A stretch of 64,000 bases of DNA from Macrostomum lignano (GCA_002269645.1 NIVC01000642.1:149586-213585); one strand, 5' to 3'. Shown: positions 620 through 46,366, counted from the first letter of the stretch. The notes: generated by a model from the letters alone, not told the origin. Translations and numbers: made by a program.

Positions 620-1130
620 AAGGTTTGTGTCTCTTCTCAGCTGTCCCCTCTTCTCCCCTCTCATCCCTCGCCTCTCTTCTCTTCTCTCTTTCCTCTCTTC
701 TCTCCTCTCTTCCGTCTCCCCTCTTCTCTCTCATCCCTCCCCTCTCTTCTCCTCTTCTCTCTTCTCCTCTCCCCTCTTCTCTCTCCCCTCTCCCCTCTCC
801 CCTCTCCTCTCTTCTCTCTCGTCTGCTCCCTCCCCTCCCATCTCTTCTCTTCTCTCTTTCCTCTCTTCTCTCCTCTCTTCCGTCTCCCCTCTTCTCTCTC
901 ATCCCTCCCCTCTCTTCTCCTCTTCTCTCTTCTCCTCTCCCCTCTTCTCTCTCCCCTCTCCCCTCTCCCCTCTCCCCTCTCCTCTCTTCTCTCTCGTCTG
1001 CTCCCTCCCCTCCCATCTCTTCTCTCATCTCTCCGTTTTCTCTCTTCTCATCCCTCTCGTCTTTTTCTTCCTCACTTCTCTCATCTTTCTACTTCTCTCT
1101 CCTCTATTCCCTCTCCTTTCCACTCTCACC
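620..1130. repeat. CT-rich low-complexity tract with internal duplications
   Basis: Almost pure C/T on the + strand (ctcttctct, ccctctc). It explains ORFs 477..1133, 618..1028 and 625..1296. Confidence 0.9.
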
Positions 1131-1451
1131 TGACCATGATCTTAGGCTTAGGCTCCAAAATATACACAAAAAACTAAAAAAAAAACATTTCGCTTCAAGG
1201 TTCACTTCCAATTCAGTCTGCAGGCATTTTTATGCTTTTTTAGCTCTTAATTTGGCAATGTTTTCATCTTTTTGGCTTCTCGATTTTGGCTTTTAGATTC
1301 AAGCACGATCAAGTGCGCATACCAGCTTGATATGCATATTGGTTGTCTCATATAAATAAGACAGTGTTCTTCTACTGTTGATTTTGTAAAAGTATGTCGC
1401 TAATGTTTTTTTGAAGCGATTTTGGGCCATTCAATTAATTTGTATAGAATG

Positions 1452-2175
1452 TGGTAAATTTGGTATCGGTAGGAGTAGAGTGTGGTAAATTTGGTATCGG
1501 TAGGAGTAGAGTGTGGTAAATTTGGGATCAGTAGGAGTAGAGTGTGGTAAATTTCGGATCGGTAGGAGTAGTGTGGTAAATTTGGGATCAGTAGGAGTAG
1601 AGTGTGGTGAATTTGGGATCAGTAGGAGTAGAGTGTGGTGAATTTGGGATCGGTAGGAGTAGAGTGTGGTAAATTTGGGATCGGTAGGAGTAGAGTGTGG
1701 TAAATTTGGGATCGGTAGGAGTAGTGTGGTAAATTTGGGATCAGTAGGAGTAGAGTGTGGTGAATTTGGGATCAGTAGGAGTAGAGTGTGGTGAATTTGG
1801 GATCGGTAGGAGTAGAGTGTGGTAAATTTGGGATCAGTAGGAGTAGAGTGTGGTGAATTTGGGATCAGTAGGAGTAGAGTGTGGTGAATTTGGGATCGGT
1901 AGGAGTAGAGTGTGGTAAATTTGGTATCGGTAGGAGTAGAGTGTGGTAAATTTGGTATCGGTAGGAGTAGAGTGTGGTAAATTTGGTATCTGTAGGAGTA
2001 GAGTGTGGTAAATTTGGGATCGGTAGGAGTAGTGTGGTAAATTTGGGATCAGTAGGAGTAGAGTGTGGTGAATTTGGGATCAGTAGGAGTAGAGTGTGGT
2101 GAATTTGGGATCGGTAGGAGTAGAGTGTGGTAAATTTGGGATCGGTAGGAGTAGAGTGTGGTAAATTTGGGATCA
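1452..2175. repeat. 31-bp minisatellite (GGTAGGAGTAGAGTGTGGTAAATTTGGGATC)n, probably intronic
   Basis: Direct 31-bp periodicity, about 23 copies, ending ~120 nt upstream of the acceptor at 2295. Confidence 0.95.
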
Positions 2176-2295: not shown

Positions 2296-5200
2296 GCTTC
2301 GCCGACTTCCGCGGCGACAAGCTGATCTTAGTGATTGCCAGCAACGCCGCCAAGCGCCGTATCGAACTGCGCATCGAAGATCCGGCCGCGTTGCGAGTGC
2401 CGTTGGAAATTTTCCACAACCTGCACCAGCCAGACGGCCTGAGCATCGGCAGCCCCCTGCCGCCAGGCCAGCAACTGACGGTGAATCGCTTCAGCCGTAG
2501 CATAGCCGGGCTGAATGACATCCTGAGCGAGATGGGCCGGCTTAGACCTGCTGCCTACGTCGGCGCCATCCTGGTGATCCCATATACCAATGCCGTTCCC
2601 GAGGCCAGGTTTAGCCGCGTTGCCGGCCGCTATCCCAGCCCGCCGCATGTTGACTCCGAGGCGGCCTGTCAGAGCCGCTCTAACTACAAGATGCTGCAGC
2701 CGTTGTTGCGGCATTTTGCCCAGGTTGCCAGACAGCCAGTCCCTGTGCAACTGTTCGACACTCGCAGCCAGATGGCCCAGCCGTTCTGCCGCCTCCAGCC
2801 CGATGCTACTATTATTGCTCTGCATTTTATCAATGGCGAACCGTTGGTTGCTATGGCAACTATTATTGTCAGCTTGATTGGCAGCGAGTCCACTTTAGTC
2901 CTGCTGGCCGATTGGGGCGCCGCCTGTCCGCGCCGATTGCGACTGCGCGCCGATAATTCTCTGTTGGCGCCCAGCACCGCCGCTGGTCCCAATGCCAGTC
3001 TGACCGTACGGCACAACTGCGCTGATGACACCGAGATCTGGGCCGAGTCCAACCTGCTAGACTCTGTCGGTGACCGAGTTCGAATCGAGTCGGTGCCCGA
3101 GCTGAGTCTGGCTAGTATTCGTTCGACTGGCCGGCTGCTGCGACATTTTATGATTCAATCGGGGCGTTTCAGGAATAGCGATGTGAGTAACGTTTAGCTG
3201 TGGGGCAGCAACTCGTTGCTGTTTTAGATTTTTTAGAAATGTTGGATGTTTTAGATTAGATGTTTAGGCTTCAAACTGAATCTTACCACCCCTTACTGAA
3301 ATCTCACCACCCCTTACTGAAATCTCACCACCCCTTACTGAAATCTCACCACCCCTTACTGAAATCTCACCACCCCTTACTGAAATCTCACCACCCCTTA
3401 CTGAAATCTCACCACCCCTTACTGGAATCTCACCATCCCACAGTGGAATCTCACCACCCCTAACTGGAATCTCACCATCCTACAGTGGAATCTCAACACC
3501 CCTTACTGGAATCTCGCCACCCCTTACTCGAATCTCACCATCCCACAGTGAAATCTCACCACCCTTACTGGAATCTCACCATCCCACAGTGGAATCTCAA
3601 CACCCCTTACTCGAATCTCACCACTCCTTCCTTGAATCTCATACCGTTTACTGGAATCTCGCCACTCCTGACTGGAATCTCATTATACCACTAGAATCTC
3701 AATATCCAACTGGAATCTCATTATACCCACTAGAATCTCACTATCCAACTGGAATCGCCCTATCCAAACTGGAATCTCACTATGCCTACGGGAATCTCAC
3801 TATCCAACTGGAATCTCACTATGCCTAGGGGAATCTCACTATCCAACTGGAATCTCACTATGCCTACGAAAATCTCACTATCCAACTGGAATCTCACTAT
3901 CCAACTGGAATCTCACTATCCAACTGGAATCTCACTATGCCTAGGGGAATCTCACTATCCAACTGGAATCTCACTATCCAACTGGAATCTCACTATCCAA
4001 CTGGAATCTCACTATCCAACTGGAATCTCACTATGCCTAGGGGAATCTCACTATCCAACTGGAATCTCACTATCCAACTGGAATCTCACTATCCAACTGG
4101 AATCTCACTATCCAACTGGAATCTCACTATCCAACTGGAATCTCACTATCCAACTGGAATCTCACTATCCAACTGGAATCTCACTATCCAACCGGAATCT
4201 CACTATCCAACTGTAATCTCACTATCCAACTGGAATCTCACTATCCAACTGGAATCTCACTATCCAACTGGAATCTCACTATCCAACTGGAATCTCACTA
4301 TCCAACTGGAATCTCACTATCTAACTGGAATCTCACTATCCAACTGGAATCTCACTATCCAATTGGAATCTCACTATCTAACTCGAATCTCACTATCTAA
4401 CTGGAATCTCACTATCCAACCAGAATCTCACTATCCAACTGGAATCTCACTATCCAACTGGAATCTCACTATCTAACTGGAATCTCACTATCCAACTGGA
4501 ATCTCACTATCCAATTGGAATCTCACTATCTAACTGGAATCTCACTATCCAACTGGAATCTCACTATCCAACTGGAATCTCACTATCCAACTGGAATCTC
4601 ACTATCTAACTGGAATCTCACTATCCAACTGGAATCTCACTATCCAATTGGAATCTCACTATCTAACTCGAATCTCACTATCTAACTGGAATCTCACTAT
4701 CCAACCAGAATCTCACTATCCAACTGTAATCTCACTATCCAACCAGAATCTCACTATCCAACTGTAATCTCACTATCCAACTGGAATCTCACTATCCAAC
4801 TGGAATCTCACTATCTAACTGGAATCTCACTATCCAACTGGAATCTCACTATCCAACTGGAATCTCACTATCCAACTCGAATCTCACTATCCAACTGGAA
4901 TCTCACTATCCAACTGGAATCTCACTATCCAACTCGAATCTCACTATCCAACTCGAATCTCACTATCCAACTGGAATCTCACTATCCAACTGGAATCTCA
5001 CTATCCAACTCGAATCTCACTATCCAACTGGAATCTCACTATCCAACTGGAATCTCACTATCCAACTCGAATCTCACTATCCAACTGGAATCTCACTATC
5101 CAACTCGAATCTCACTATCCAACTGGAATCTCACTATCCAACTTGAATCTCACTATCCAACTGGAATCTCACTATCCAACTGGAATCTCACTATCCAACT

Positions 5201-7541
5201 CGAATCTCACTATCCAACTGGAATCTCACTATCCAACTGGAATCTCACTATCCAACTGGAATCTCACTATCCAACTCGAATCTCACTATCCAACTGGAAT
5301 CTCACTATCCAACTTGAATCTCACTATCCAACTGGAATCTCACTATCCAACTGGAATCTCACTATCCAACTGGAATCTCACTATCCAACTTGAATCTCAC
5401 TATCCAACTGGAATCTCACTATCCAACTTGAATCTCACTATCCAACTGGAATCTCACTATCCAACTTGAATCTCACTATGCCTAAGGGAATCTCGCCACC
5501 CCTAACTACATGTAAAGTAAGTCTCACCGTCGCAGCCCCCGCGCCCCACTTACACAACAGAGCGAGATCACTTTCGACGTGCAATTCAACCAGTGGGTCT
5601 TCAGGCCGATGGCCGCCCTGCAGACCAAGCGAATAGTCAGCGGCTTCACTGCGGACTCGGCCCTTGTGCACCTGGATAAATCCGTGCTGAACAACTGCAC
5701 GCACGGGCTGACCAACCTGTCCATCGGTGACTGTCCGCTAATTGACAACGGCACGCATCTCCACCGGCTGCTGCCCACAGTGGGGCTGCTCAGCGCCTGT
5801 CGGATGAGGCGTAGCGGCAACCACATGCTTGCCACTCTGTCAGCCAGCGTCCAGCTGCCCAGCAATGCCGGGCAATTCCTCATCTCGCTGCCATTCTCCT
5901 GGACTCTGCCAGCCGGGATTAGCGCTAATCTGCCCCTGACTGAGCAAACTCGTGACAGTCGCGCTTCGCCAACATCGGCCAGTTCCGCGGCCAGCGCTGC
6001 GCTGGACAAATTTCCATTCCGGCTGACTGTCAGCCAGCTGCTGTTGGATGGCCACTCCAGAGCGATTGAACTGCAATCAACAAGATTGGAATATTTGTAT
6101 AGCGGCGAGCTCATCCATTGCGAGCTGATTGTCCGGGGCTGCGGACAGCCGGTTCCGCTCGTGTCCGATGGTTGCACCAGGAGCGGCGCCCTCTGGCTCG
6201 GCCCGGGCGTCGCCGTGCCGCTGCTCCGACTGCCGTCCTCGCTGCCATCCAGGGTCTGCAGCGGCAGCGGCACCCGGATGGCCGTCGTCGCCTGCCGACT
6301 GGCCGTCTGCCGACTGGCCGAGCCTGAGCTAGCTGGCTTGACATCCGACGAGGCCGTTGCTATGGGAATGCGGCGCTGTCGGCCGCAGGGCGAGGCTTGC
6401 GGCGAGGCTGCTGGACGAATTGCTGCTCGGAATCAAAGTCGCTTGGTTTTGGTGAGGGTCATACGCTAATTCTCCAACTCTCCTGACACATCGCCATTCT
6501 CAAATCCCATCCGCTTAGCATCGCCATTGAATGAGATCTCACCCTCTTGGCACTGTCAGTCGATGAGATCTCACCCTCTTGACATAGTCGATGAGATCTC
6601 ACCCTCTTGACATAGTCAACGAGATCTCACCCTCTTGAGATGGGCAATGAGATCTATCACCCTCCTGACACTGTCAGTCAATGAGATATGACCCTCTTGA
6701 CACTGTCAGTCGATGAGATCTCACCCTTTCGACACTGTCAGTCGATGAGATCTCACCCTTTCGACACTGTCAGTCGATGAGATCTCACCCTTTCGACACT
6801 GTCAGTCGATGAGATCTCACCCTTTCGACACTGTCAGTCGATGAGATCTCACCCTTTTGACACTGTACGAACACCTAAACACGTACCAACTGTTACAATC
6901 ATAAATGATCAGTTATAATCCTACAGTCTGATTTCCACCGCCATCAGAGCCGCAATCTGCCGCTGCTGTCACTGGAAACCGAGGCCCTGCCGTTGAGCAC
7001 ATTGTTTGCCGGTGCCAATGCGTCAGTTGTTAACCATGCCAATAAGCACCAAGCCGCCACCGACGCGCCTCCGGCAGTTGCTGCCGAAGTTATTTCATCA
7101 ACCCATGCCACAATGCTGGCAGCGTCGATGACTGCGGCTCAGCCTACTGCGGAGCCCCGACCGGGCACTGAGACCCCGCGGCTTAGCCAGAGTGCCGCGG
7201 CTAAACCGGACAGACCAGCCTACCAACTGTGGTCGCATCTGCTAGCAGCCGTATTGGCTTTCATTGTAGGCATTGGCACCATGGCGTCGCTCTGGGCTAT
7301 TGTACATCGCCTGCGTTGGCAGCGTCGTCGGCATCGGCGACAGCTTCGCGAGTGTCGCTGCAGCAGCAGCAGCAACAGCGGCGGCGGCGGAGGCGGCGGC
7401 TGCGCTGTTGCCAAATCTTCAGCTGATCCTCTGCTCCGCTTGGGTGGCGGTGGCGGCGGCGCAGGCGGCGGAGGCCATTCCTGCGACTCCTCATCTGGCT
7501 TTGGCGACTGCGGCGGCGGCGGCGGCAGAGCGAAAGTTTAA
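2296..7541 (+). CDS. Betaglycan (TGFBR3)/endoglin-like type I membrane protein: orphan region + ZP domain + TM helix; 5' exon(s) not identified
   Basis: Exons 2296-3182 (ctcag|GC ... GAT|gtgagt), 5561-6451 (acaacag|AGC ... TTG|gtgagg) and 6948-7541 (catcag|AGC, alternative acceptor 6927; stop TAA). Both internal introns are phase 0. ZP-like motifs: LVHLDKS, CPLIDNGTHL, LSACRMR, PLVSDGC, VVACRLAVC, CRPQGEAC. TM segment LLAAVLAFIVGIGTMASLWAIV is followed by the basic stop-transfer HRLRWQRRRHRR. Confidence 0.7.
3275..5475. repeat. Intronic minisatellite: 21-bp unit (CTGAAATCTCACCACCCCTTA) grading into a 19-bp unit (CCAACTGGAATCTCACTAT)
   Basis: Periodicity read directly. It fills most of intron 3183-5560 and explains ORFs 3260-5469. 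Confidence 0.95.
6530..6865. repeat. 32-bp intronic minisatellite (GATGAGATCTCACCCTYTYGACACTGTCAGTC)n
   Basis: About 10 copies inside intron 6452-6947. Confidence 0.9.
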
Positions 7542-7689
7542 AACTGAGGGCTCTAGAGGGAGGGATGGCCTATCTGTGCAAGTGTAGAGCATTATTATTA
7601 TTACATGATGAGGCGCTACTCTATATAATAGCGCCACCTTTTGCTCATTTGAAGATCATATGTTTGATCTATTTGATCATATCGATTAG

Positions 7690-8130
7690 ATCTCGACACT
7701 TGGCACTGTCAGTCGATGAGATCTCACCCTCTTGACACTGTCAGTCGATGAGATCTCACTCTCTTGGCACTGTCAGTCGATGAGATCTCACTCTCTTGGC
7801 CCTGTCAGTCGATGAGATCTCACCCTCTTGACACTGTCAGTCGATGAGATCTCACTCTCTTGGCACTGTCAGTCGATGAGATCTCACTCTCTTGGCCCTG
7901 TCAGTCGATGAGATCTCACCCTCTTGACACTGTCAGTCGATGAGATCTCATCCTCTTGGCACTGTCAGTCGATGAGATCTCACTCACCCTCTTGGCACTG
8001 TCAGTCGATGAGATCTCACCTCTTAACACTGTCAGTCGATGAGATCTCACCCTCTTGACACTGTCAGTCGATGAGATCTCACCCTCTTGACACTGTCAGT
8101 CGATGAGATCTCACCCTCTTGACACTGACT
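7690..8130. repeat. Second array of the same 32-bp minisatellite, 3' of the stop codon
   Basis: Same unit as 6530-6865, about 13 copies. Confidence 0.9.
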
Positions 8131-10014
8131 CTTGATCTCGAAAGTTTAAACTGAGGGCTCTAGAGGGAGGGATGGCTTATATGTGCAAATGTAGAACATT
8201 ATTATTATTACATGATGAGGCGTTAACCTATAAAAATAGCGCACTCGCAATCTGGCGATTCCCATTCATTGTGACTACCTCTTAGGTCTGTTTAGTATTT
8301 GAATTTGTTTGTTCTTAGGCGAGTAGTAATTGTGTGCAAGTGTACAGTAGTTGTTGTGTTAGATGTGTTGTACATAACAAAGGGTGATTTTTCAACTAAA
8401 CCTACCGATATGTCAGCTTCTAGTCTATCTGTCTGTCTGTCTGGCTTATGCCACGCGTTCTGTCTCCAAATCGTTATTCCAGGCTAAAAAACTGTTTCAT
8501 TGCTCACTAATCAGTGCAGGTAAACCATTTTTAACGGTTAGAAATCTTTCTAATTTGAAGTTCCGATCAGGGTTTTGAACAGTAGGTTAGTGATTTTGTG
8601 AGAAATAGTGAATTGTTCTTGCTGTGCATCATTCTGTTCCATCCGATTAATTATGGAGATATTTTTATGCAAAGCAGCGGCGCGTCTTTTCCTTTTTCCC
8701 TCCAATGATTAACAGCTTCTGGATACCCCATAGGGGGCCAAACAAGTCAAAGAAATATTGAACGGCTTGGTCTCAAGGGGAGAGAAAATAACCCTAAGAC
8801 AGCGGCGCGTGACTTGTCCGGCTTTCTGACTTGACCACGTTTTGTCCTCTGGGATTTAACCCCCCCCCTCCCCCTCACTTGCCGCTTTGAGGCAGTTCCG
8901 GCACTTGCTTGACTACAAGTGATTAGGGAGTGAATGTTAAGCAAAGCTGCCGTATTGAAATAATTACAGCTTTTTTATTTGCGTAAAAATGCAATTTAAA
9001 CACACTTCTGCAGGGCTCCTAAATCACTAACTGCCTCAGTATATTAATTGTACTTTAAATTTTCTTGCTTTTATTGCTTCTCTGCTTGCCTGTTATAAAG
9101 TTGTCAAATTTTAATAGGGACTCAAACTTGACTAAGTTTTTTACGCTTCAAAAATCATATTTTTCTGTTCGAATAATTCTTTAATTATGTAAAAATCTAT
9201 AAATCTTACAATTGCTTTGTTTCTTGTCTTGTAAATTTTATATTGTCTGCAACTGTGCACTACTTACTTGACTAACAGTAGTATATATTGTATGCAAACC
9301 CGGCAATTCGCCGCAGCGTAACAATCAGGGATTTATTGTTTCATTTTTTCACCTGTCGATATCGGATTTGAAAAGAGGATTGTACACCAAGCACCCGCTC
9401 CCCAAGCCGCTGTGTATGTTTCATTCAACCCATAATTTTCCATTTCAATTTGTTTCTGTACAGGCCTGTACGCATCGTTGTCTTATATTGTCTTATAATT
9501 ATGCAATTGATGTGTAGCCCGTATGTACTTTTCCCATAATAATCCTCTGCTGTTGCATAGGAATCTACCTCGGTTTTTGCCAGGCATAGCAACAAGCTGG
9601 ATATCAAGTCGAGCTGAATTCCAGTGATCTATTTTTCAAATAATTATACCCCTACGCCACGTAAGGTTATGCAATTTTTCGAAGTCTACTACTTCTTTGT
9701 CAGAGTAGTAGTATGAAAGCAACACAGTTAAGAACACGTGTTTCAAACTGATTTGTGAGCAGACGATGAAAGGTTTGTTAGCCTAAGATTATGCATTCAA
9801 ATTTATTGCATTACATTACTGGGTCGGCAGAAACGACAAACCGCAAAATAAAATTTCATGTAACAAACTGACAGAATTACCAGAAAACAACGCTGACATA
9901 AGCACAAAATTGAGCATAAAAGTAAGTTAATGTGAATTTTTTGACAACAAATTCCTAATTACACGCGAGATTTAATTGTAGAAATTCAAAAATTTTTATT
10001 CTGGCTGCACGCAC

Positions 10015-10986: not shown

Positions 10987-11534
10987 TCAAATCAGCCTGA
11001 GAACCTCGGCCGAGTCCAGGAACACTCGGCCGGAGAAGCCGCCAAGCGCCAGTAGAGAATCGGCGCCGAGCGCCACCAGACCCAGACCGGCGCGCGGCAC
11101 CGCCAGCTGAGCGGAGGACGCCGACAAACAAGAAGCCGATGTCGCTTTCGCCGATGCGGCGAGATTCTCGCAGCCGACCAGCGCCGGCTGATGGCCGTCG
11201 GAGCCGCCGACGAGCCACAGGTCGCCGGGGCCCAGCGAGGCCATGGCGGCGCCGCGCCTCGGACAGGCGAGCGACAGCGGCTGCGACTGCGTCGGCTCAG
11301 CGTCGTCCACGAAGTCGTCATCTGAGGAGGATCCCCGGCCGAGCATCAGGTCGGATGTGACCGGATTGGCGTCCCAGCGGTTGACGCGCGGATCCCACAC
11401 TTCTAGGCTGGCCAGACAGCCGCCGCTCCAGCCGTCCGAGCCGCCGGCAACCCACAGCTGGCCCTGGGATGGCGGATGGGGCAGCTGGGTGTTCGACTGT
11501 CTGTCTGTCTGTCTGTCTGTCTGTCTGCCTGTCA

Positions 11535-11574
<40 letters not shown>

Positions 11575-14500
11575 TAGTGTCTGTCTTAGTATCTGTCTTA
11601 GTGTCTGTCTTAGTGTCTGTCTGTCTGTCTGTCTATCTGTCTGTCTGCCTGTGTCCTAGTGATAGTTAATCTATCTTTTCGACTTTCTGCTATTGGCATG
11701 TCTAAGTGACTAACGGCAGGTAACACAGGTAAAATAGGAAAGAAATGAAATTTTAGAGACGACTCTAAAACGACGAGATGTCACGTTACAGGTCGCCACG
11801 TTAGAGTCGCCTGAGAGCCACTCTAAAGTGTTTTTATTGTTTGCGACTCTGGAGCCGCAGAGTCAGATCTGAGGCGTGCCAGAGACGCTGCAGAATGACT
11901 GATTTGCGTCTAAAGCGCATCTGAGTCACTTTCAATTACATCATTGTTTTTTTGTCAATATTAAACTAACCTGGGCAACGCGCATCAATGTCGCGCTGCC
12001 AGTACAGCTATCAGATACTTGCCTGGTGAGCGGCCATGCAGCACTCGTTTCTGGGTTCGGACAGTCCCGGCATTGCCTGCCAGCGGCCGACGCGCGGGTC
12101 CAACCATTCGGCGTAGCGCACCGACGCTGCGCCGTATCGGCCGCCGACGGCAAACACGGCGCCGTTTAGTTCGGCGACGGCGCAGCCGCTGCGGGCGCGC
12201 GACATCGGCGGGCCGGGCAGCCAATGGTTGCCGTCGAACTCTTCAACCTGAGTGAGCGAATGGCGAGGATTCAAGCCTCGGGGATCTGAGGAGGTGCTCA
12301 AGCTGAGGATCCAATGAGAAGGTGATCAAGCCGAGGATCCAATGAGAAGGTGCTCAAGCCGAGGATTCGATGTGAAGATGCTCAAGCTGAGGGATGAGTG
12401 CATGATGAGAAGATGCTCAAGCTGAGGAGTGCATGATGAGAAGATGTTCAAGCTGAGCAGTGCATGATGAGAAGATGTTGAGGAGTGTATGATGAGAAGA
12501 TGCTCAAGCTGAGGAGTGCATGATGAGGAGATGCTCAAGCTGAGGAGTGCATGATGAGAAGATGTTCAAGCTGAGCAGTGCATGGTGAGAAGATGTTCAA
12601 GCTGAGGAGTGTATGATGAGAAGATGCTCAAGCTGAGGAGTGCATGATGAGGAGATGCTCAAGCTGAGGAGTGCATGATGAGGAGATGCTCAAGCTGAGG
12701 AGTGCATGATGAGGAGATGCTCAAGCTGAGGAGTGCATGATGAGAAGATGCTCAAGCTGAGGAGTGTATGATGAGAAGATGCTCAAGCTGAGGAGTGCAT
12801 GATGAGGAGATGCTCAAGCTGAGGAGTGCATGATGAGGAGATGCTCAAGCTGAGGAGTGCATGATGAGGAGATGCTCAAGCTGAGGGAGGAGTGCATGAT
12901 GAGATGTTCAAGCTGAGCGCTCAGCCTGTGCCTGTGACGCTGGGCCTCCAGCTCACCGTGGCCAACTCAGAGACGCCATCGGAGCCGCCGCAGGCGAATA
13001 CACGGCAGGCGCCGGTTCTGCCAACAACAGCGGCTGCAGAGAAGCGACTACGCGGGCCGCCTGCTAGCTCGGGTCCGGGACGCCAGGCGCCGCTGTCCGG
13101 GCAGTAGATCTCGCAGCTGCGCAGACACTGACCGCGATTATAACCCCCGGCAACCAGCAGTTTAAAACCGCCTTCGCTTTTATCGTCCAGTCTAACAGCG
13201 CCAAAGGAGGCCCTGGGCGACAGCATGTACGGGAAATGATCGCCGTGGCCGCTAGTAGACGCCGAGTTGTCGCTGTGAAATGAGACCACGCTGCTCTGGG
13301 CGGACGAGCGGCGTCGAACCCGGCACTGCTCCCGCAGCAGGGGGTCCTCGGCTAGGGGCAGCTGGCGGACGCTCATGAGACAGAGGGAGGGGCCGAGCCG
13401 GGCGAGCAGGAGCAGGCAGCTGGCGCCAGCCCGCTGCTGCGGCTGCTGATCGATTATTGACAGCACTCGAGAGGGCAGCTGACGTGAGGAGCGCTGGTTG
13501 TTGCTCTGGGATTTATTAGGGAAGAGAGGGAGGCTGAGGCTGTTGTATTTGAAAATCACAGTGTATCAGGCTGGCTCAGCAACTGACACTCTGGGAGGCT
13601 GGCTCAGCAACTGAGGATCTGGGAGGCTGGCTCAGCAACTGACACTCTGGGAGGCTGGCTCAGCAACTGACACTCTGGAAGGCTGGCTCAGCAACTGAGG
13701 ATCTGGGAGGCTGGCTCAGCAACTGACACTCTGGGAGGCTGGCTCAGCAACTGACACTCTGGGAGGCTGGCCCAGCAACTGACACTCTGGGAGGCTGGCC
13801 TAGCAACTGACACTCTGGGAGTGGGAGGCTGGTCCAGCAACAGAGGATCTGGGAGGCTGGTCCAGCAACTGAGGATCTGGAAGGCTGGCCCAGCAACTGA
13901 GGATCTGGGAGGCTGGCCCAGCAACTGAGGATCTGGGAGGCTGGCCCAGCAACTGACACTCTGGGAGGCTGGCCCAGCAACTGACACTCTGGGAGGCTGG
14001 CCCAGCAACTGACACTCTGGGAGGCTGGCCCAGCAACTGACACTCTGGGAGGCTGGCCCAGCAACTGACACTCTGGGAGTGGGAGGCTGGTCCAGCAACT
14101 GAGGATCTGGGGGGCTGGCTCAGCAACTGAGGATCTGGGAGGCTGGCCCAGCAACTGAGGATCTGGGGGGCTGGCTCAGCAACTGAGGATCTGGGAGGCT
14201 GGCCCAGCAACAGAGGATCTGGGAGGCTGGCCCAGCAACTGAGGATCTGGGAGGCTGGCTCAGCAACTGACACTCTGGGAGGCTGGCCCAGCAACTGACA
14301 CTCTGGGAGGCTGGCCCAGCAACTGACACTCTGGGAGTGGGAGGCTGGTCCAGCAACTGAGGATCTGGGGGGCTGGCTCAGCAACTGAGGATCTGGGAGG
14401 CTGGCCCAGCAACTGAGGATCTGGGGGGCTGGCTCAGCAACTGAGGATCTGGGAGGCTGGCCCAGCAACTGAGGATCTGGGAGGCTGGCCCAGCAACTGA

Positions 14501-17500
14501 GGATCTGGGGGGCTGGCTCAGCAACTGAGGATCTGGAAGGCTGGCCCAGCAACTGAGGATCTGGGAGGCTGGCCCAGCAACTGAGGATCTGGGAGGCTGG
14601 CATAGCAACAGAGGATCTAACGCACCATGATCTTAGCGTGCATCCGACGCGAATCAATGTAATCCCTCAGCTGAGGCAGGTGGCTGGCCAGCTCAAGCTT
14701 CGCGTCGTCGGCGGCCGCAGCGTCCTCGGGACCCGAGGAGTCGGACAAAGCCACCGCAGCAGCCGCAGCGACAACAGCCGTGGCGAACTGCTGCTGCTCG
14801 CAGTCGATAACAGCCGAACCGTCTGAGGTCAGGTAGAGCAGGTGAACCTGGCCGGCGATGTGCGCCAGGAGTCGCTGAGCAGTGGCTGTCTGGCAGAAGT
14901 CGCCGAGAGTAGCGACAGCTTCGCCGTACTCCTTCGCCCCGCCGGAGCCAGTCACTGTATTCCGGTCCGCGTCCCCGTTGTCGCTCAAGTCCGTGTCGCT
15001 GTCGGAAGAGTCGGAGTCGGAAGTGCGGCGGTGTCGATCCCGACAGTCCAGTATCAGACGGTGTAGGGTTCCGGCGAACCAGTCGCACAGCAGGTCGCCT
15101 ATAGCGGCTGAGCTGGCGGTCTCAGTGGAGCCGACTGCGAGTGAGGACAGGTGTGTGTGCTGCCAGCTCTTGTTTGTGCGCTGCCAGCTCTTGTTTGTGT
15201 GCTGCCAACTCTTGTTTGTGCGCTGCCAGCTTTTGTTTGTGTGCTGCCAGCTCTTGTTTGTGTGCTGCCAGCTCTTGTTTGTGCGCTGCCAGCTCTTGTT
15301 TGTGCGCTGCCAGCTCTTGTTTGTGCGCTGCCAGCTCTTGTTTGTGCGCTGCCAGCTCTTGTTTGTGTGCTGCCAACTCTTGTTTGTGCGCTGCCAGCTT
15401 TTGTTTGTGTGCTGCCAGCTCTTGTTTGTGTGCTGCCAGCTCTTGTTTGTGTGCTGCCAGCTATAGTGAGTGTGCTGCCAGCTCTTGTTTGTGCGCTGCC
15501 AACTCTTGTTTGTGCGCTGCCAGCTCTTGTTTGTGTGCTGCCAACTCTTGTTTGTGCGCTGCCAGCTTTTGTTTGTGTGCTGCCAGCTCTTGTTTGTGTG
15601 CTGCCAGCTCTTGTTTGTGTGCTGCCAGCTATAGTGAGTGTGCTGCCAGCTCTTGTTTGTGCGCTGCCAACTCTTGTTTGTGCGCTGTCAGCTTTTGTTT
15701 GTGTGCTGCCAGCTATAGTGAGTGTGCTGCCAGCTCTTGTTTGTGCGCTGCCAACTCTTGTTTGTGCGCTGTCAGCTTTTGTTTGTGTGCTGCCAGCTAT
15801 AGTGAGTGTGCTGCCAGTTCTGAATCAGTCAGTGGGTAGGTACCTACGACACTAACGACACTCGTAGTGACACTAACACATTACATATTAAGGGAAACCT
15901 CTATAAAGTCACACAATATAATAATACTCATACGTGGATTTCGCATGGTATTCATAGCATAACTTTCAACGGAAAGCAGCTAACAGAACCCGTTTTTTCA
16001 GGCAGTTTAAACCCAGTTTTAGTTGTAGGAGTTACCAGTAGATCGAATAGCGATACATAAATCACATGCAGTCGCAGTCAGCTAAAGTAGCAATTTCACT
16101 CTCACTGCTAGTGCCTGCTATGCCATCCCAAAGCGGTGTAGCTAGGAAGGCAACAAGTAAACATGTTATTGCGCACTTTTATAATCAAGTCGTGACTCGT
16201 GACTTAAGAGAAGTTTGTTAACTTTAAAGATATTAAGAATTCATATAGATTGCGTAACTCTTACCTAGCAGGTCAACTTTTATCTTAGGCAGCGGACAAT
16301 CCAAGTCCAAGTCTACTATCTCTGCCAAATGCTGCACAATGTAGTTATCGATACCGTCAACTAGGCTGTCAAAGTCGGTTACTTGGGAGCGAAGCTCTGA
16401 AACATGGCACAGAGTTTTGGGAGAATTCATACAGATAGTATTAGAGGAATTCATGCCGGATTACCCGTGACACCTGTGGGATTTTAGATCAATGGGGGAT
16501 TAGTGGCAACACCTGTGGGATCTGAGATCCATGGGAGATTAGTAGCGAGACACCTGGGGGATCTGAGATCTATAGGAGATTAGTGGCGAACACCTGTGGG
16601 ATCTATGGGAGATTAGCGACGCTTGTGGGATGAGATCCATGGCTATGGGAGATTAGTGGCGACACCTGTGGGATCTGAGATCCATGGGAGATTAGTGACG
16701 ACACCTGGGGGATCTGAGATCCATGGGAGATTACTGACGACACCTGTGGGATCTGAGATCCATGGGATATTAAAGGCGAACATCTGTGGGATCTGAGATC
16801 CATGGGAGATTAGTGGCGAGACACCTGGGGGATCTGAGATCTATAGGAGATTAGTAGCGAACACTTGTGGGATCTATGGGAGATTAGTGGCGACACCTGG
16901 GGGATCTGAGATCCATGGAAGATTACTGGCGACACCTGTGGGATCTGAGATGCATGGGATGTTAAAGGCGAACATTTGTGGGATCTGAGATCCATGGGAG
17001 ATTAGTGGCGAGACACTTGGGGGATCTGAGATCCATGGGAGATTAGTGGCGAGACACCTGGGGGATCTGAGATCCATGGGAGATTAAAGGCGAACACCTG
17101 TGGGATCTGAGATCCATGGGAGATTAGTGGCGACACTAATGTGAGATCTGAGATCCATGGAGATTAGCGACACCTGTGGGATCTATAGGAGATTAGCGAC
17201 ACTAGTGGGATCTGAGATCCATGGGAGATTAGTGGCGACACGTGGGGGAGCTCCAAGATGCACAATCAAGCTGCGGAAAAGAAGGCACAAAAGCAGAATA
17301 CACCAACCAAGCACGTTGCGCGGCTTCAACCCAGCCAGTAGTGTCTGGGCGCAGTACTTGACCAGAACAGGCAGGCGTAGGTAGCAGGCTGCCGAGTGCA
17401 GCTGGGCCAGAGCCAGAGGCTCCATCGAGCCGGGATCCGGCAGGCAGCCGGTGTACACAAAGTGCAGTGCATGGCCAAACGCATCCGGCGTGAGATGACG

Positions 17501-17695
17501 CGGCAGGTTAAAGTGTCCACAGTTTGGTTCCTCAGTTAGCAGGCGCATGAAATGCGGTGACGCCGCCGCTAGAACGCATTTGTGCACCAGAAAGCGGCGC
17601 CCGTGAACGCTAATCTGCAGATCGCAAAACATGCCCTCCTCGCGTAGCTTGGCCAGCTTGGCCAGGTGATCGGGTATGCCACTAGGCTCAGACAT
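10987..17695 (-). CDS. BTB-BACK-Kelch (Kelch-like family) protein, ~759 aa
   Basis: Exons (-): 17695-17308, 16396-16265, 15134-14626, 13505-12957, 12247-12023, 11463-10987. Total 2280 nt; intron phases 1,1,0,0,0 all match. BTB motif FCDLQISVHGRRFLVHKCVLAAASPHF; BACK-like LVDGIDNYIVQHLAEIV; Kelch repeats LLVAGGYN, VFACGGSDG, VFAVGGRYG, LWVAGGSDG, LWLVGGSDG, LLALGGFSG. Confidence 0.9.
11498..11655. repeat. (CTGT)n microsatellite in Kelch intron 5
   Basis: Tetranucleotide run read directly. Confidence 0.95.
12290..12915. repeat. 31-bp minisatellite in Kelch intron 4 (GCTGAGGAGTGCATGATGAGAAGATGCTCAA)n
   Basis: Direct periodicity, about 20 copies. Confidence 0.95.
13567..14617. repeat. 28-bp minisatellite in Kelch intron 3 (GGAGGCTGGCYCAGCAACTGA[GGAT/CACT]CTG)n
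   Basis: Direct periodicity with two interspersed variants; starts ~9 nt inside the donor end of the intron. Confidence 0.95.
15155..15820. repeat. 21-bp minisatellite in Kelch intron 2 (CTGCCAGCTCTTGTTTGTGYG)n
   Basis: Direct periodicity; explains ORFs 15122-15855. Confidence 0.95.
16470..17245. repeat. ~39-bp minisatellite in Kelch intron 1 (GATCTGAGATCCATGGGAGATTAGTGGCGACACCTGTGG)n
   Basis: Direct periodicity with indel variants. Confidence 0.9.
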
Positions 17696-42538: not shown

Positions 42539-45500
42539 TCATTCCTGCAGCCGGCCGTCCTCGATCAGGCGATCCAGGAAGTAGCGCACCCGGTCCATCT
42601 CCTCCACCCTGTTGGTCATCCGGACAACGTCGAGCAGCTCCTTGATGCCGACATTCAAATGCCGATTCTGCGTCTCCTTCTTGATCCTGTCCAGCTCCTC
42701 TTTGGTGAACTCGGCGCTGTCAACTTTTTTCAGCGCCTCCAACAGTTCGTCAGAATTGGTGAGATTGCTGACGTGAATCTTGCCGGCCGTGAAGCACTGG
42801 ACAAGGCCGAGTTCGAGCAGCGCCTCCCGGCAGCTGGTGGTGCCCAGCAGCAGCAGGCTGCGATTCTTCGGCAGCGGCGCAGTGATCAAATCGCGGAGCG
42901 CCTGCAGCACGTAGTTCGAATACCTGGCATTGGGGTCAGGGCGGTTGCTTTGTCATGTTTTAATACAAAACACTCGCTGCTATCTTCTTCAGTGGGCGAC
43001 CGTGTCTCTTGGTGTGGGCGCCCCCGTCTCTTGGTGTGGGCGCCCCCGTCTCTTGGTGTGGGCGCCCCTGTCTCTTGGTGTGTGGGTGCCCCCTGTCTCT
43101 TGGTGTGGGCACCCCTGTCTCTTGGTGTGTGGGTGCCCCCTGTCTCTTGGTGTGGGCGCCCGTGTCTCTTGGTGTGTGGGTGGCGGGTGCCCCCTGTCTC
43201 TTGGTGTGGGCGCCCCTGTCTCTTGGTGTGTGGGTGCCCCCTGTCTCTTGGTGTGGGCACCCCTGTCTCTTGGTGTGTGGGTGCCCCCTGTCTCTTGGTG
43301 TGGGCACCCCTGTCTCTTGGTGTGTGGGCGCCTCCCGTCTCTTGGTGGGCCAGGGGGTCTGATGGCGCGAGAATCAGGCTTGTCCTGTTCGCTGTTCCTG
43401 TTACTCTGACTTCAGTAGTAGCGTAAGGTAGTATTTTATCAGTAATACGTCGTGCATTGTTACTGATAGTAGTAGTATATGCGTAGATTTTGCAAGACAT
43501 GTATCACGCAATTAAATATCTATTACTAAATTACAAAAGTAGAAGACTCATGATGCAATTCATTGCAGAAAACTGCATTCAGCTCACCTGGGCCCAACAG
43601 GGCTGTAGTCAATAAGGCCTTCTAACCCGTCCAAAATAATCACGGCCTGTTTGGCTTTGTGCGCGTCGTCAAAGTGCTGCTTAATAGCCTGGCATTTGGC
43701 CACCTCGCTGTAGCCAATCATGCGCTTGCTGGTGCACAGTCGGACATAGGAGAATCCCGATTGGCGGGCGATGTGCACCGCCAGGGCGGTTTTGCCTGCG
43801 GCGAGAATTAATAAAACACGGATAGTTAAGCAATGTGCTTAAAACAGGTCGCACCTACCGATCAGGTAGGTATGCCAAGACAAGAGGTGTCTGGGGGGTG
43901 ACACCAAGACAGACACTAACCATGTGACATCAAGACAGACACCATCCAGGTGACACAAAGACACCATCCAGGTGACACCAAGACAGACACCATCCAGGTG
44001 ACACCAAGACAGACACCATCCAGGTGACACCAAGACAGACACCATCCAGGTGATATCAAGACAGACACCATCCAGGTGACACCAAGACAGACACCATCCA
44101 GGTGACACCAAGACAGACACCATCCAGGTGACACCAAGACAGACACCATCCAGGTGAAACCAAGACAGACACCATCCAGGTGACACCGAGACACCATCCA
44201 GGTGACACCGAGACAGACACCATCCAGGTGACACCAAGACAGACACCATCCAGGTGACACCAAGACAGACACCATCCAGGTGACACCGAGACACCATCCA
44301 GGTGACACCGAGACACCATCCAGGTGACACCGAGACACCATCCAGGTGACACCGAGACACCATCCAGGTGACACCAAGACACCATCCAGGTGACACCAAG
44401 ACACCATCCAGGTGACACCAAGACACCATCCAGGTGACACCAAGACACCATCCAGGTGACACCGAGACACCATCCAGGTGACACCAAGACAGACACCATC
44501 CAGGTGACACCAAGACAGACACCATCCAGGTGACACCGAGACACCATCCAGGTGACACCGAGACACCATCCAGGTGACACCGAGACACGCCAGTCACTCA
44601 CCGCTATTAGGCGGCCCCTCGAGCAGCAGGGCCACGGGCCGACCGCTGTCCAGGCTCTGCTCGGCCTCGGCGCGGGCGGCCCTGGTGGCCAGACTGCCGT
44701 TCTGCACGATGTGCTGCACCGGCTCGCCCCAGTCGATGATGCCGCCAGTGATGTAGCGGTCCAGCTCCTCTTCCTGGGTGCCGAACGCCGGCTTGACGTC
44801 GTGCTCGAGCGCGTGCATGAAATCGCCGCGCTGTACAAGGAGGCGATCCACGGCGTCCGGATCCAGCCGGACAGTGTCCGAGGCCTGCAAATGTTATTAG
44901 TCGGTGATCCAGTGTATTGCCTTTTTAGTCAACTTCCAAATTTAGCTTCCGGTCTATAGGGTATGTAGCTTCCGGTCTATCGGGTATTCAGCTTCCGGTC
45001 TATCGGGTATTTAGCTTCCGGTATGTCGGGTATTCAGCTTCCGGTCTATAGGGTATTTAGCTTCCGGTATGTCGGGTATTCAGCTTCCGGTATGTCGGGT
45101 ATTCAGCTTCCGATCTATCGGGTATTTAGCTTCCGGTATGTCGGGTATTCAGCTTCCGGTCTATAGGGTATTTAGCTTCCGGTCTATAGAGTATTTAGCT
45201 TCCGGTATGTCGGGTATTCAGCTTCCGGTATGTCGGGTATTCAGTTTCCGGTCTATCGGGTATTTAGCTTCCGGTCTATCGGGTATTTAGCTTCCGGTAT
45301 GTCGGGTATTCAGCTTCCGGTCTATCGGGTATTCAGCTTCCGGTATGTCATGATAATAAAAATCTGATCTGACCAAATTTCCAACGGCCTTGGAAGGGGC
45401 TCACCTGCACCAATCGGTTCATGGCAGTCACGGTGGCGGCCCGAACCAGGCCAGCCAGTTCGGCGCCAGAAAAATTCTTCGTCTCCTTGGCCAGCTCCTG

Positions 45501-45761
45501 AACGTCAACGTCCTGCGCCAGTTTGCCGTTCTTGCGCAGCTGCCCCGTGTGGATCTCCAGGATCTGCAGCCGGCCGTGCTGGTCCGGCAGGCTGATCTCC
45601 ATTTGAACCTCGAAACGGCCCGGGCGGAGCAGAGCCTCGTCTATCATGTCCTTGCGATTGGTCATGCCGATCACCAGGATGTTGTTCAAGGGCTCCACGC
45701 CTTCCATCTTGGTTAGCAGCTGGTTCACCACCGTGTCGTGCACCTGGGAAGATAGATAGAC

Positions 45762-45816
<55 letters not shown>

Positions 45817-46285
45817 CAGATCCTCCCTACCTGCGTGCCACCGCCAACCGAGCCGCGAGTTTTGCAGATGGCGTCAATCTCGTCAAAGATGATGATGTGC
45901 AGGGCGGAGTTGTTGCCAACCCGTTTGTACTCTTCCTCGGCCTCGGCAAATAATTGCCGAATTTTCGACTCGCTCTCGCCGACATATTTATCCAGAATGG
46001 ACGGTCCGTTGACGATTTTTGGTTCGCGGGCGTTCAGCATCTTGCCGATCTGGCGGGCCATGAGGGTCTTGCCGGTGCCCGGCGGCCCGTACAGCAGCAG
46101 ACCGCGCACGTGGTTCATGCCCAGCTGCTCCACCAGGTCCGGCGGGAAGATCCTTGAGGCAAATGTTCGACGAAATATGTCGCTAAATTCTCTGTCTAGG
46201 CCGCCGATGCCCATCATGCTGAAGTTCCAGTCCGGATTGATGATGGACTGGTACACCTGGGAGTGGCGGCGGGGCGGGCGGCGCT

Positions 46286-46366
<81 letters not shown>

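What the first reader, a model, noticed from the sequence alone, without database searches (positions are those of the whole stretch)
2296..7541. Betaglycan/endoglin-like TGF-beta co-receptor architecture in an apparently non-chordate genome
Seen: three in-phase exons giving a long N-terminal region, a Cys-patterned domain, one TM helix and a Ser/Gly-rich tail ending in AKV. Recalled human betaglycan segments line up with it: CKAKMNGTHF vs CPLIDNGTHL, IVAVEKD vs LVHLDKS, LNGCGTR vs LSACRMR, CELTLC vs CRLAVC, CVPPDEAC vs CRPQGEAC. In the orphan region, IIAPNSI/SMTMTKSIRDD/LVKWALDNG line up with LRADNSL/SLTVRHNCADD/TEIWAESN. Betaglycan and endoglin are best known from vertebrates. An orphan+ZP+TM protein in a probable flatworm would suggest an older origin for type III receptor modulation (inference).
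Basis: partly seen in the sequence, partly recalled or inferred. Interest (0 to 1): 0.7.

Follow-up and report, generated by a model that had tools for sequence, protein, structure and literature searches.

The report
Flatworm betaglycan/endoglin-like membrane protein gene
This is a real, already annotated gene of the flatworm Macrostomum lignano for a single-pass membrane protein whose outer part is predicted to fold like the ligand-catching "orphan" domain of the vertebrate TGF-beta co-receptors betaglycan and endoglin, which would be the first such protein seen in a protostome, although its sequence is no more like theirs than chance allows.

Summary
The window is the last 64 kb of Macrostomum lignano contig NIVC01000642.1. 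The finding covers exons 2-4 of GenBank gene BOX15_Mlig026668g2 (PAA79292.1, 872 aa). UniProt calls it a "ZP domain-containing protein". The exon with the signal peptide lies about 3 kb upstream of the window.

The gene model, the transmembrane helix and the -AKV tail are confirmed. Their match to the flatworm protein is not statistically better than chance: Smith-Waterman z is about 0, hhalign probability is 0.1-0.3%, and HMMER and Pfam find nothing.

A template-free AlphaFold2 model of the N-terminal 369 aa was built from flatworm sequences only. Its five best hits among 350,542 PDB chains are all BG or endoglin (ENG) orphan domains (E = 5e-6 to 9e-3). The next hit has E = 0.09. Four conserved cysteines mirror the orphan-domain disulfide pattern. 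A zona pellucida (ZP)-type cysteine pattern follows, with no furin site before the membrane.

The model is poor (pLDDT 46, TM 0.2-0.27). The conserved PDZ-binding tail is absent. Homologues were found only in M. lignano.

Verdict: the architecture claim is partly supported, family membership is unproven, and function is inferred. BG is already known in echinoderms, so the possible novelty is its presence in a protostome.

The parts
2296..3182 (+). Coding exon 2 of BOX15_Mlig026668g2 (aa 83-378). It encodes most of the orphan-like N-terminal region. Its first two bases complete the split Gly83 codon (phase 1). It ends in phase 0 before GTGAGT.
   Evidence: 99% identity to P0001 aa 79-378. AF2 plus Foldseek hits to BG/ENG orphan domains. 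pN/pS between two genomic copies is 0.33.
3183..5560 (+). Intron 2, almost entirely a tandem array with a 19-bp period (consensus ACTGGAATCTCACTATCCA plus a diverged GAATCTCACCACCCCTTACTG variant, about 110 copies).
5561..6451 (+). Coding exon 3 (aa 379-675), phase 0 at both ends. It encodes the ZP-like module. The ZP-N-like part is about aa 400-492 (5624-5902), with Cys 424, 438 and 458. The ZP-C-like part is about aa 530-660 (6014-6406), with six Cys: 565, 583, 623, 628, 651 and 658.
   Evidence: UniRef names it 'ZP domain-containing protein'. Cys are in register with BG and ENG ZP in hhalign, though not significantly. pN/pS is 0.09. There is no Pfam ZP hit.
6452..6947 (+). Intron 3, with a 32-bp tandem array (6531-6866).
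6948..7541 (+). Coding exon 4 (aa 676-872 plus stop). It encodes an Ala/Thr/Ser/Pro-rich stalk (6948-7217), the TM helix (7227-7304), and a basic then Gly-rich cytoplasmic tail ending in RAKV (7305-7538). The stop codon is at 7539-7541.
   Evidence: pN/pS is about 1 for stalk and tail. There is no RxxR between the last ZP-C Cys and the TM.

Best explanation
The region encodes a genuine M. lignano type I membrane glycoprotein.

Shown:
- The domain order is: signal peptide (upstream exon), an N-terminal region of about 360 aa, a cysteine-patterned module of about 280 aa, a low-complexity stalk of about 100 aa, one TM helix, and a non-catalytic tail of 77 aa.
- The two folded regions are under purifying selection. 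The stalk and tail are not.

Inferred from structure prediction and motifs:
- The N-terminal region adopts the two-lobed betaglycan/endoglin orphan-domain fold, stapled by Cys21/Cys43 pairing with Cys247/Cys207.
- The middle module is a ZP module with a six-Cys ZP-C and no furin site. That would leave the protein membrane-tethered and non-polymerising, like BG and ENG.

Inferred by analogy only:
- It acts as a non-signalling cell-surface co-receptor or reservoir.
- It would capture a dimeric TGF-beta-superfamily ligand (BMP or activin type in a flatworm) through the orphan-like domain, and present it to, or withhold it from, type I/II receptor kinases.

It is best described as an extremely diverged flatworm variant of the type III TGF-beta receptor architecture. 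It has a different tail, with no PDZ motif.
For: - Gene reality: exact match to PAA79292.1 and to two further genomic copies. Overall pN/pS is 0.37: 0.33 (orphan-like), 0.09 (ZP-like), 0.98 (stalk) and 0.92 (TM plus tail).
- Paralogue: a 29%-identical M. lignano paralogue, BOX15_Mlig027385, keeps the same architecture and 14 of the Cys.
- Fold search on the N-terminal AF2 model (pLDDT 45.9; aa 77-167 at 64-82):
  - 9fdy_C, rat BG orphan: E = 5e-6, prob 1.00.
  - 9fk5_E, zebrafish BG orphan: E = 3.8e-5.
  - 5hzw_A and 5i04_A, human ENG orphan: E = 1.6e-4 and 2.1e-4.
  - 7lbg_D, human TGFBR3: E = 9e-3, TMt 0.43.
  - The next hit has E = 0.09 and prob 0.06.
- The independent full-length model also had 5hzw_A as its top hit (E = 0.015).
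- Cys positions: P0001 has 21, 43, 207, 247. ENG has 30, 53, 182, 207, with disulfides 30-207 and 53-182. Human BG has 28, 52, 197, 221.
- In all of them, the second Cys of each pair is followed within 5-12 aa by a hydrophobic strand: EVHVLNL / EVHIIEL in BG, and QLMTIAITL / ATIIALHF in the flatworm protein.
- ZP: UniRef names, Cys in register with BG and ENG, and no RxxR before the TM.
- Calibration: ENG's own ZP is below Pfam's ZP-N threshold and is missed by the ZP-C model, so a Pfam negative is weak evidence against a ZP module.
Against: - The AF2 models are low-confidence. Global TM-scores to BG/ENG are only 0.21-0.27, with RMSD around 20 A. The match therefore rests on local-structure (3Di) strings, not on a superposable fold.
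- AF2 saw the ENG orphan structures in training.
- No sequence method finds BG or ENG:
  - An exhaustive phmmer search over 1.84 billion representatives returned only M. lignano proteins.
  - PDB phmmer and hmmsearch found nothing.
  - Precomputed Pfam, which includes PF26060 for the vertebrate hits, is blank for this protein.
  - hhalign probability is 0.1-0.3%, whereas ENG against BG gives 94% (orphan) and 66% (ZP) in the same set-up.
- UniRef labels the paralogue's N-terminal fragment 'CUB domain-containing'.
- The tail ends in -AKV, and in -GAA in the paralogue. BG and ENG end in the conserved -STA and -SMA.
- No orthologue was found outside M. lignano.
- No ligand-binding evidence exists.
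Confidence: 0.55

Rival explanations
1. It is a lineage-specific ZP-domain membrane or apical-matrix protein. Its N-terminal region is some other beta-rich module, for example two degenerate CUB-like domains as in CUZD1 or DMBT1. It would act in epithelial surface, adhesion or matrix biology, with no relation to type III TGF-beta receptors. The Foldseek hits would then be an artefact of a poor model.
For: - UniRef names the 447-aa N-terminal fragment of the paralogue 'CUB domain-containing protein'.
- CUB + ZP + TM is a common architecture (established knowledge: CUZD1, DMBT1).
- The AF2 model has pLDDT 46 and TM-scores below 0.3.
- There is no sequence similarity to BG or ENG.
- The family was found only in M. 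lignano.
- ZP proteins in invertebrates are mostly matrix proteins.
Against: - Pfam CUB gives no hit, even at E <= 10, for either paralogue's N-terminal region.
- hhalign against a CUB profile built from cubilin and neuropilin-2 domains gives probability 0.2-0.3%.
- None of the many CUB structures in the PDB appears among the top 50 Foldseek hits, while five BG/ENG orphan entries lead with a sharp gap.
- A second, differently cropped model gave the same top family.
- There is no furin site for release or polymerisation.
Confidence: 0.3
2. The N-terminal region does share the orphan-domain fold, but the protein is not a TGF-beta-family co-receptor. The fold would be an older ligand-binding or scaffold module, reused in Macrostomum for another partner. 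The similarity of architecture to BG/ENG would then reflect domain shuffling or deep divergence with a change of function.
For: - The fold-level hits come with no conservation of any sequence feature.
- BG and ENG themselves use different surfaces for different ligands (PMC11865472).
- The cytoplasmic tail is unrelated and is not even conserved between the two paralogues.
- TGF-beta sensu stricto, inhibin alpha and BMP9/10 are not known from flatworms (established knowledge).
Against: - The complete order orphan-like, ZP-like, TM, short tail is the same as in BG/ENG, not just one domain.
- Sea urchin BG binds a non-vertebrate TGF-beta ligand, Panda. Co-receptor function is therefore not tied to vertebrate ligands (PMC11239237).
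Confidence: 0.15

Closest known systems
Betaglycan (TGFBR3)
   Same: - Type I membrane glycoprotein with an N-terminal region of about 340-360 aa.
- In the predicted structure, that region's best PDB matches are the rat and zebrafish BG orphan domains.
- Four Cys at comparable positions (28/52/197/221 against 21/43/207/247).
- A membrane-proximal module with a six-Cys ZP-C pattern: CxLxxC followed by CxPxxEAC.
- No furin site, and a short non-enzymatic tail.
   Different: - No detectable sequence similarity.
- ZP-N lacks the canonical C1 and C4.
- An Ala/Thr/Ser-rich stalk of about 100 aa lies before the TM.
- The tail is basic and Gly-rich and ends in -AKV, instead of Ser/Thr-rich ending in -STA.
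- GAG sites and ligand-binding residues cannot be recognised.
Endoglin (ENG/CD105)
   Same: - The orphan region is the top hit of the full-length model, and is ranked 3-4 for the N-terminal model.
- There are six Cys in the orphan-like region, as in ENG. The first four have matching order and similar spacing (C30-C53 is 23 aa; C21-C43 is 22 aa).
- An extra Cys in ZP-N lies 12 residues before C2: ENG has CTITGLTFWDPSC and the flatworm protein has CTHGLTNLSIGDC.
   Different: - ENG has a reduced ZP-C with one intramolecular disulfide, and interchain Cys for dimerisation (PMC5464963). The flatworm protein has a six-Cys ZP-C.
- ENG is reported only from amniotes.
- There is no sequence similarity and no -SMA motif.
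Echinoderm betaglycan (sea urchin TBR3)
   Same: It is a non-chordate type III receptor homologue. It shows that the family pre-dates vertebrates and can bind a non-vertebrate TGF-beta ligand, Panda.
   Different: It is a deuterostome protein, recognisable by ordinary annotation. I could not fetch its sequence to compare. The flatworm protein is from a protostome and is unrecognisable by sequence.
CUZD1 / DMBT1 (CUB + ZP + TM proteins)
   Same: Beta-rich N-terminal domains, then a ZP module, a TM and a short tail. UniRef labels the paralogue fragment as CUB-containing.
   Different: No CUB signal appeared in Pfam, hhalign or Foldseek here.
Uromodulin / GP2 type polymerising ZP proteins
   Same: The same six-Cys ZP-C motif pattern, with CxVxLC followed by a close Cys pair.
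   Different: Those proteins carry a consensus furin site and are released and polymerised. No RxxR lies between ZP-C and the TM here.

Membership tests
Betaglycan/endoglin (type III TGF-beta co-receptors) | Type I topology: signal peptide, large ectodomain, one TM, and a short tail without enzymatic domains | tested here: met
   The signal peptide MLLLLLISTSLLAASPVRA is in upstream exon 1. The TM is aa 769-794, the juxtamembrane stretch is basic, and the tail is 77 aa.
Betaglycan/endoglin (type III TGF-beta co-receptors) | N-terminal orphan domain with the duplicated OR1/OR2 fold | tested here: met
   Met only at the fold-search level. The top five PDB hits of the template-free AF2 model are all BG/ENG orphan domains (E = 5e-6 to 9e-3), and the next hit has E = 0.09. 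The full-length model gave the same top family. Caveat: pLDDT is 46 and TM is 0.21-0.27, so the topology itself was not verified.
Betaglycan/endoglin (type III TGF-beta co-receptors) | Two N-terminal Cys and two mid-domain Cys forming the OR1-OR2 disulfide staples (ENG C30-C207 and C53-C182) | tested here: inconclusive
   Four Cys (21, 43, 207, 247) are conserved in both paralogues. Their order and spacing resemble ENG and BG. Their connectivity cannot be read from the sequence.
Betaglycan/endoglin (type III TGF-beta co-receptors) | Membrane-proximal ZP module (ZP-N plus ZP-C) | tested here: inconclusive
   UniRef uses the name 'ZP domain-containing protein' for four entries of the family. Cys are in register with BG and ENG ZP. 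Against this, there are no Pfam ZP-N or ZP-C hits and hhalign probability is 0.3%. ENG's own ZP also escapes Pfam.
Betaglycan/endoglin (type III TGF-beta co-receptors) | Statistically significant sequence or profile similarity to BG/ENG (e.g. Pfam PF26060) | tested here: not met
   Precomputed Pfam is blank for P0001, while the vertebrate hits carry PF26060. The interactive Pfam copy lacks PF26060, so only the precomputed result counts.
Betaglycan/endoglin (type III TGF-beta co-receptors) | Conserved Ser/Thr-rich tail ending in a class I PDZ-binding motif (-STA / -SMA) | tested here: not met
   The tail ends in -RAKV, and the paralogue's in -CGAA. The tails are not conserved between the paralogues.
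Betaglycan/endoglin (type III TGF-beta co-receptors) | No consensus furin cleavage site after ZP-C (non-polymerising, membrane-retained) | tested here: met
   In both paralogues there is no RxxR between the last ZP-C Cys and the TM.
Betaglycan/endoglin (type III TGF-beta co-receptors) | Binds TGF-beta-superfamily ligands and modulates type I/II receptor signalling | not testable with these tools
   Needs binding assays and knock-down experiments.
CUB-ZP membrane proteins (CUZD1/DMBT1 type) | One or more CUB domains N-terminal to the ZP module | tested here: not met
   There is no Pfam CUB hit at E <= 10. hhalign against a CUB profile gives probability 0.2-0.3%. No CUB structure appears in the top 50 Foldseek hits. 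The only pointer is the UniRef name of the paralogue fragment.
Polymerising ZP proteins (uromodulin, ZP1-4, tectorins, cuticlins) | Consensus furin site and external hydrophobic patch between ZP-C and the membrane anchor | tested here: not met
   There is no RxxR in aa 659-765. A hydrophobic patch could not be assessed.

The most novel reading that the evidence does not exclude
The protein is a true, extremely diverged orthologue or relative of the type III TGF-beta receptors in a protostome, and it binds flatworm BMP/activin-family ligands. That would place the orphan + ZP co-receptor at or before the protostome-deuterostome ancestor. It would also imply that such co-receptors have been missed across protostomes because their sequences evolve beyond recognition.
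Probability: 0.3. Interest if true: 0.75.

Novelty: new variant of a known kind. Interest (0 to 1): 0.55.

Why it matters
Type III receptors (BG, ENG, TGFBR3L) control which TGF-beta-family ligands a cell can see. They are studied almost only in vertebrates. The papers found here report ENG only in amniotes and BG in echinoderms.

A flatworm protein with the same ectodomain architecture would push this layer of regulation back to the bilaterian ancestor. It would also give a regenerating, transgenic model, M. lignano, in which to test it. And it would show that structure-based searches are needed to trace this fast-evolving family.

If the resemblance proves spurious, the gene is just one more lineage-specific ZP membrane protein.

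Tried and rejected
- Pfam scans of the spliced protein and of its N-terminal and ZP pieces, for both paralogues, gave nothing relevant. I later found that this Pfam copy lacks PF26060, because human BG orphan itself gives no hit. Only the precomputed blank counts.
- phmmer and hmmsearch against PDB sequences gave nothing.
- The word-indexed protein search with the protein, and again with a two-paralogue profile, returned only self hits.
- The exhaustive phmmer search returned only the M. lignano paralogue.
- hhalign against BG orphan, BG+ENG orphan, ENG alone, BG ZP, ENG ZP and a CUB profile gave probability 0.1-0.3% in every case.
- An internal duplication of the N-terminal region, as in OR1/OR2, was not significant. 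The best alignments do pair LILVIASNAAKRRIELRIE with LVLLADWGAACPRRLRLRAD.
- Smith-Waterman and semi-global shuffling tests gave z of about 0.
- The full-length AF2 model was too poor to say anything about the ZP part (pLDDT 34).
- I did not add BG/ENG sequences to the AF2 alignment, because that would have been circular.
- Literature searches for the gene identifiers, and for flatworm, protostome or lophotrochozoan BG, found nothing.
- 'Not a gene' was rejected. The splice sites are canonical, three near-identical annotated copies exist, and the folded regions are under purifying selection.


Full report
**Where the window comes from**

The spliced translation of the three exons is 99-100% identical to GenBank PAA79292.1 (BOX15_Mlig026668g2, 872 aa) of the flatworm Macrostomum lignano. 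UniRef calls this protein a 'ZP domain-containing protein'. The window is identical to contig NIVC01000642.1 of assembly GCA_002269645.1, from about base 149,586 to the contig end. The gene is therefore already annotated, but only as hypothetical or ZP-containing.

**Gene model**

- In the window the coding exons are 2296-3182, 5561-6451 and 6948-7541, with AG/GT boundaries.
It encodes aa 1-82, including the signal peptide MLLLLLISTSLLAASPVRA and two conserved Cys.
- The introns are filled with satellite arrays.
- Two further near-identical copies exist on other contigs.
- Comparing the copy on NIVC01000785.1 codon by codon gives pN/pS of 0.33 for aa 20-378, 0.09 for aa 379-665, 0.98 for the stalk and 0.92 for TM plus tail. 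The counts are small. They agree with two folded, constrained ectodomain regions followed by unconstrained linker and tail.

I wrote out human TGFBR3 and ENG from memory and verified them against PDB chains. TGFBR3 aa 21-358 and 443-781 are 100% identical to 7lbg_D. ENG is 100% identical to 5i04 and 5hzv.

Their similarity to the flatworm protein is not above chance:

- Smith-Waterman and semi-global z-scores are between -1.1 and +1.1, against 15-21 for ENG versus BG.
- hhalign probabilities are 0.1-0.3%, against 94% (orphan) and 66% (ZP) for ENG versus BG in the same set-up.
- PDB phmmer and hmmsearch found nothing.
- An exhaustive phmmer search of 1.84 billion representatives found only a 29%-identical M. 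lignano paralogue, BOX15_Mlig027385.
- Precomputed Pfam is blank for the protein, whereas the vertebrate BG hits carry PF26060.
- The interactive Pfam copy does not contain PF26060, and it also misses ENG's ZP-C. Its negatives therefore carry little weight.

**Structure-based evidence**

The full-length AF2 model, with a 4-sequence M. lignano MSA, was poor (pLDDT 34). Even so, its only notable PDB hit was the human ENG orphan region, 5hzw_A (E = 0.015). All other hits had E >= 0.6.

A second model covered aa 18-386 only. It used the same kind of MSA and no templates. It reached pLDDT 45.9 and pTM 0.43, with aa 77-167 at 64-82.

Its Foldseek search of 350,542 PDB chains gave these top five hits:

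| Rank | Chain | Protein | E-value |
|---|---|---|---|
| 1 | 9fdy_C | rat BG orphan | 5e-6 (prob 1.00) |
| 2 | 9fk5_E | zebrafish BG orphan | 3.8e-5 |
| 3 | 5hzw_A | human ENG orphan | 1.6e-4 |
| 4 | 5i04_A | human ENG orphan | 2.1e-4 |
| 5 | 7lbg_D | human TGFBR3 | 9e-3 (TMt 0.43) |

- After these comes a gap: the next hit has E = 0.09 and prob 0.06.
- The alignments span 361-433 columns, essentially the whole domain.
- No CUB, Ig or generic beta-sandwich entry intrudes.
- Global TM-scores are only 0.21-0.27. The model is not a superposable orphan domain; the signal lies in the order of local structural states.
- AF2 was trained on the ENG orphan structures. The result therefore means that the network reads this sequence as ENG/BG-like. 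It is not independent physical evidence.

**Cysteine pattern**

Saito et al. describe the ENG orphan region as two intertwined beta-helix-like domains, each with one helix. The domains are stapled by C30-C207 and C53-C182 (PMC5464963).

| Protein | Cys positions |
|---|---|
| Human ENG | 30, 53, 182, 207 (plus 242, 330) |
| Human BG | 28, 52, 197, 221 |
| P0001 | 21, 43, 207, 247 (plus 293, 324) |
| Paralogue P0006 | 32, 64, 219, 255 (plus 306, 333) |

All the flatworm positions listed are conserved between the two paralogues.

- In every case, the second Cys of each pair is followed after 5-12 residues by a hydrophobic strand. BG has EVHVLNL and EVHIIEL, ENG has EVHVLFL and EAHILRV, and P0001 has QLMTIAITL and ATIIALHF.
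- The model's helix at aa 156-166 (GLNDILSEMGR), followed by two strands, parallels BG NEHLLNWARKEYG-AVTSFTEL-IYIKV and ENG TQILEWAAERG-PITSAAEL-ILLRL.
- These correspondences are suggestive but not statistically testable here.

**ZP module**

Evidence for a ZP module:

- UniRef's automatic name appears on four family entries.
- hhalign alignments to BG and ENG ZP are colinear but not significant. They put the cysteines in register:
  - LVHLDKS with IVAVEKD;
  - GDCPLIDNGTH with PTCKAKMNGTH;
  - SACRMR with NGCGTR;
  - HCELI...DGCTRS with TCFIS...NICPKD;
  - ACRLAVC with QCELTLC;
  - RCRPQGEAC with KCVPPDEAC.
- There are six conserved Cys in the ZP-C-like part.

These motifs are generic to ZP modules (uromodulin has them too). 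They do not place the module with BG/ENG rather than with other ZP families, and a phylogeny at this divergence would be meaningless. ZP-N lacks the canonical C1 and C4. There is no RxxR between the last ZP-C Cys and the TM in either paralogue, which fits a non-released, non-polymerising ZP protein.

**The CUB alternative**

UniRef labels a 447-aa N-terminal fragment of the paralogue 'CUB domain-containing'. I could not reproduce this:

- Pfam CUB gives nothing.
- A CUB profile built from real cubilin and neuropilin-2 domains gives hhalign probability 0.2-0.3%.
- No CUB structure appears among the top 50 Foldseek hits.

The C-x(22-33)-C-hydrophobic-strand start of the protein resembles the start of a CUB domain, and that may explain the label.

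**Differences from BG/ENG**

- There is no sequence similarity.
- An Ala/Thr/Ser/Pro-rich stalk of about 100 aa separates ZP-C from the TM.
- The tail is basic, then Gly-rich, and ends in -AKV. In the paralogue it is about 170 aa long and ends in -GAA. BG and ENG end in the conserved -STA and -SMA PDZ ligands.
- ZP-C resembles that of BG, not the reduced ZP-C of ENG.

**What is known already**

- ENG is reported only from amniotes.
- BG is not vertebrate-only. The sea urchin has one BG gene whose product co-precipitates the TGF-beta ligand Panda (PMC11239237). Every echinoderm examined has a TGFBR3 (PMC10381214).
- I found no report for any protostome, flatworm or lophotrochozoan, nor for these gene identifiers.
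- I could not query InterPro for the taxonomic spread of PF26060.

**Verdict**

- The architectural interpretation is partly supported by predicted-structure search and by the cysteine pattern. My estimate that the orphan-like + ZP-like reading is right is about 0.55-0.6.
- Membership of the BG/ENG family is not established. Sequence similarity and the PDZ tail were tested and not met.
- A TGF-beta co-receptor function is inference by analogy, with a probability of about 0.3.
- The main rival, at about 0.3, is a lineage-specific ZP membrane protein with an unrelated beta-rich N-terminal domain.

Noticed in passing
window 1445-2174, 3278-5494, 6531-6866, 7699-8127: Large tandem satellite arrays fill the introns and flanks of the gene. 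There is a 31-bp unit (about 24 copies) upstream of exon 2 and a 19-bp unit (about 110 copies) making up nearly all of intron 2. The same 32-bp unit (ATGAGATCTCACCCTCTTGACACTGTCAGTCG) occurs both in intron 3 and downstream of the stop codon.
   Followed up: partly
window 7531-7634 and 8139-8242: The end of the coding sequence and the start of the 3' UTR (…AAAGTTTAAAACTGAGGGCTCTAGAGGGAGGGATGG…) are repeated about 600 bp downstream at 90% identity over 105 bp, just after the second 32-bp array. This suggests a local tandem duplication of array plus 3' end.
   Followed up: partly
window 6927 vs 6948: There are two in-frame AG acceptors 21 nt apart for the last exon. Which is used, or whether both are, is not known.
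   Followed up: no
window 5561-7229 joined to 11059-17603 (+ strand): An older UniProt model (A0A1I8JKM5, 'Protein kinase domain-containing protein', P0002) fuses exons 3-4 of this gene to reading frames further downstream. The current annotation instead places a BTB/Kelch gene on the minus strand there (L001 24013-30567, i.e. window from about 10987). The old model looks chimeric.
   Followed up: partly
window 665-1058: A CT-rich low-complexity block is organised as a 168-bp repeat (2.3 copies, 92% identity). It gives long spurious ORFs on both strands.
   Followed up: no
window 45348-46346 (- strand): An ORF carries a Walker-A AAA+ ATPase sequence (…[44 protein letters not shown]…) that looks like an NSF-type vesicle-fusion ATPase exon. 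It is flanked by (CLSV)n-coding simple repeats. This was recognised by eye only.
   Followed up: no
paralogue BOX15_Mlig027385 (P0006, P0045/P0046; not in the window): UniRef names the N-terminal 447-aa fragment of the paralogue 'CUB domain-containing protein'. No tool available here detected a CUB domain in it.
   Followed up: partly
tool libraries (not the window): The interactive Pfam library lacks PF26060 (TGFBR3/Endoglin-like N-terminal domain), because human BG orphan gives no hit. The precomputed Pfam annotations of the protein database do include it. Also, a phmmer search with BG orphan as query does not find ENG in the PDB, although the reverse search does.
   Followed up: yes
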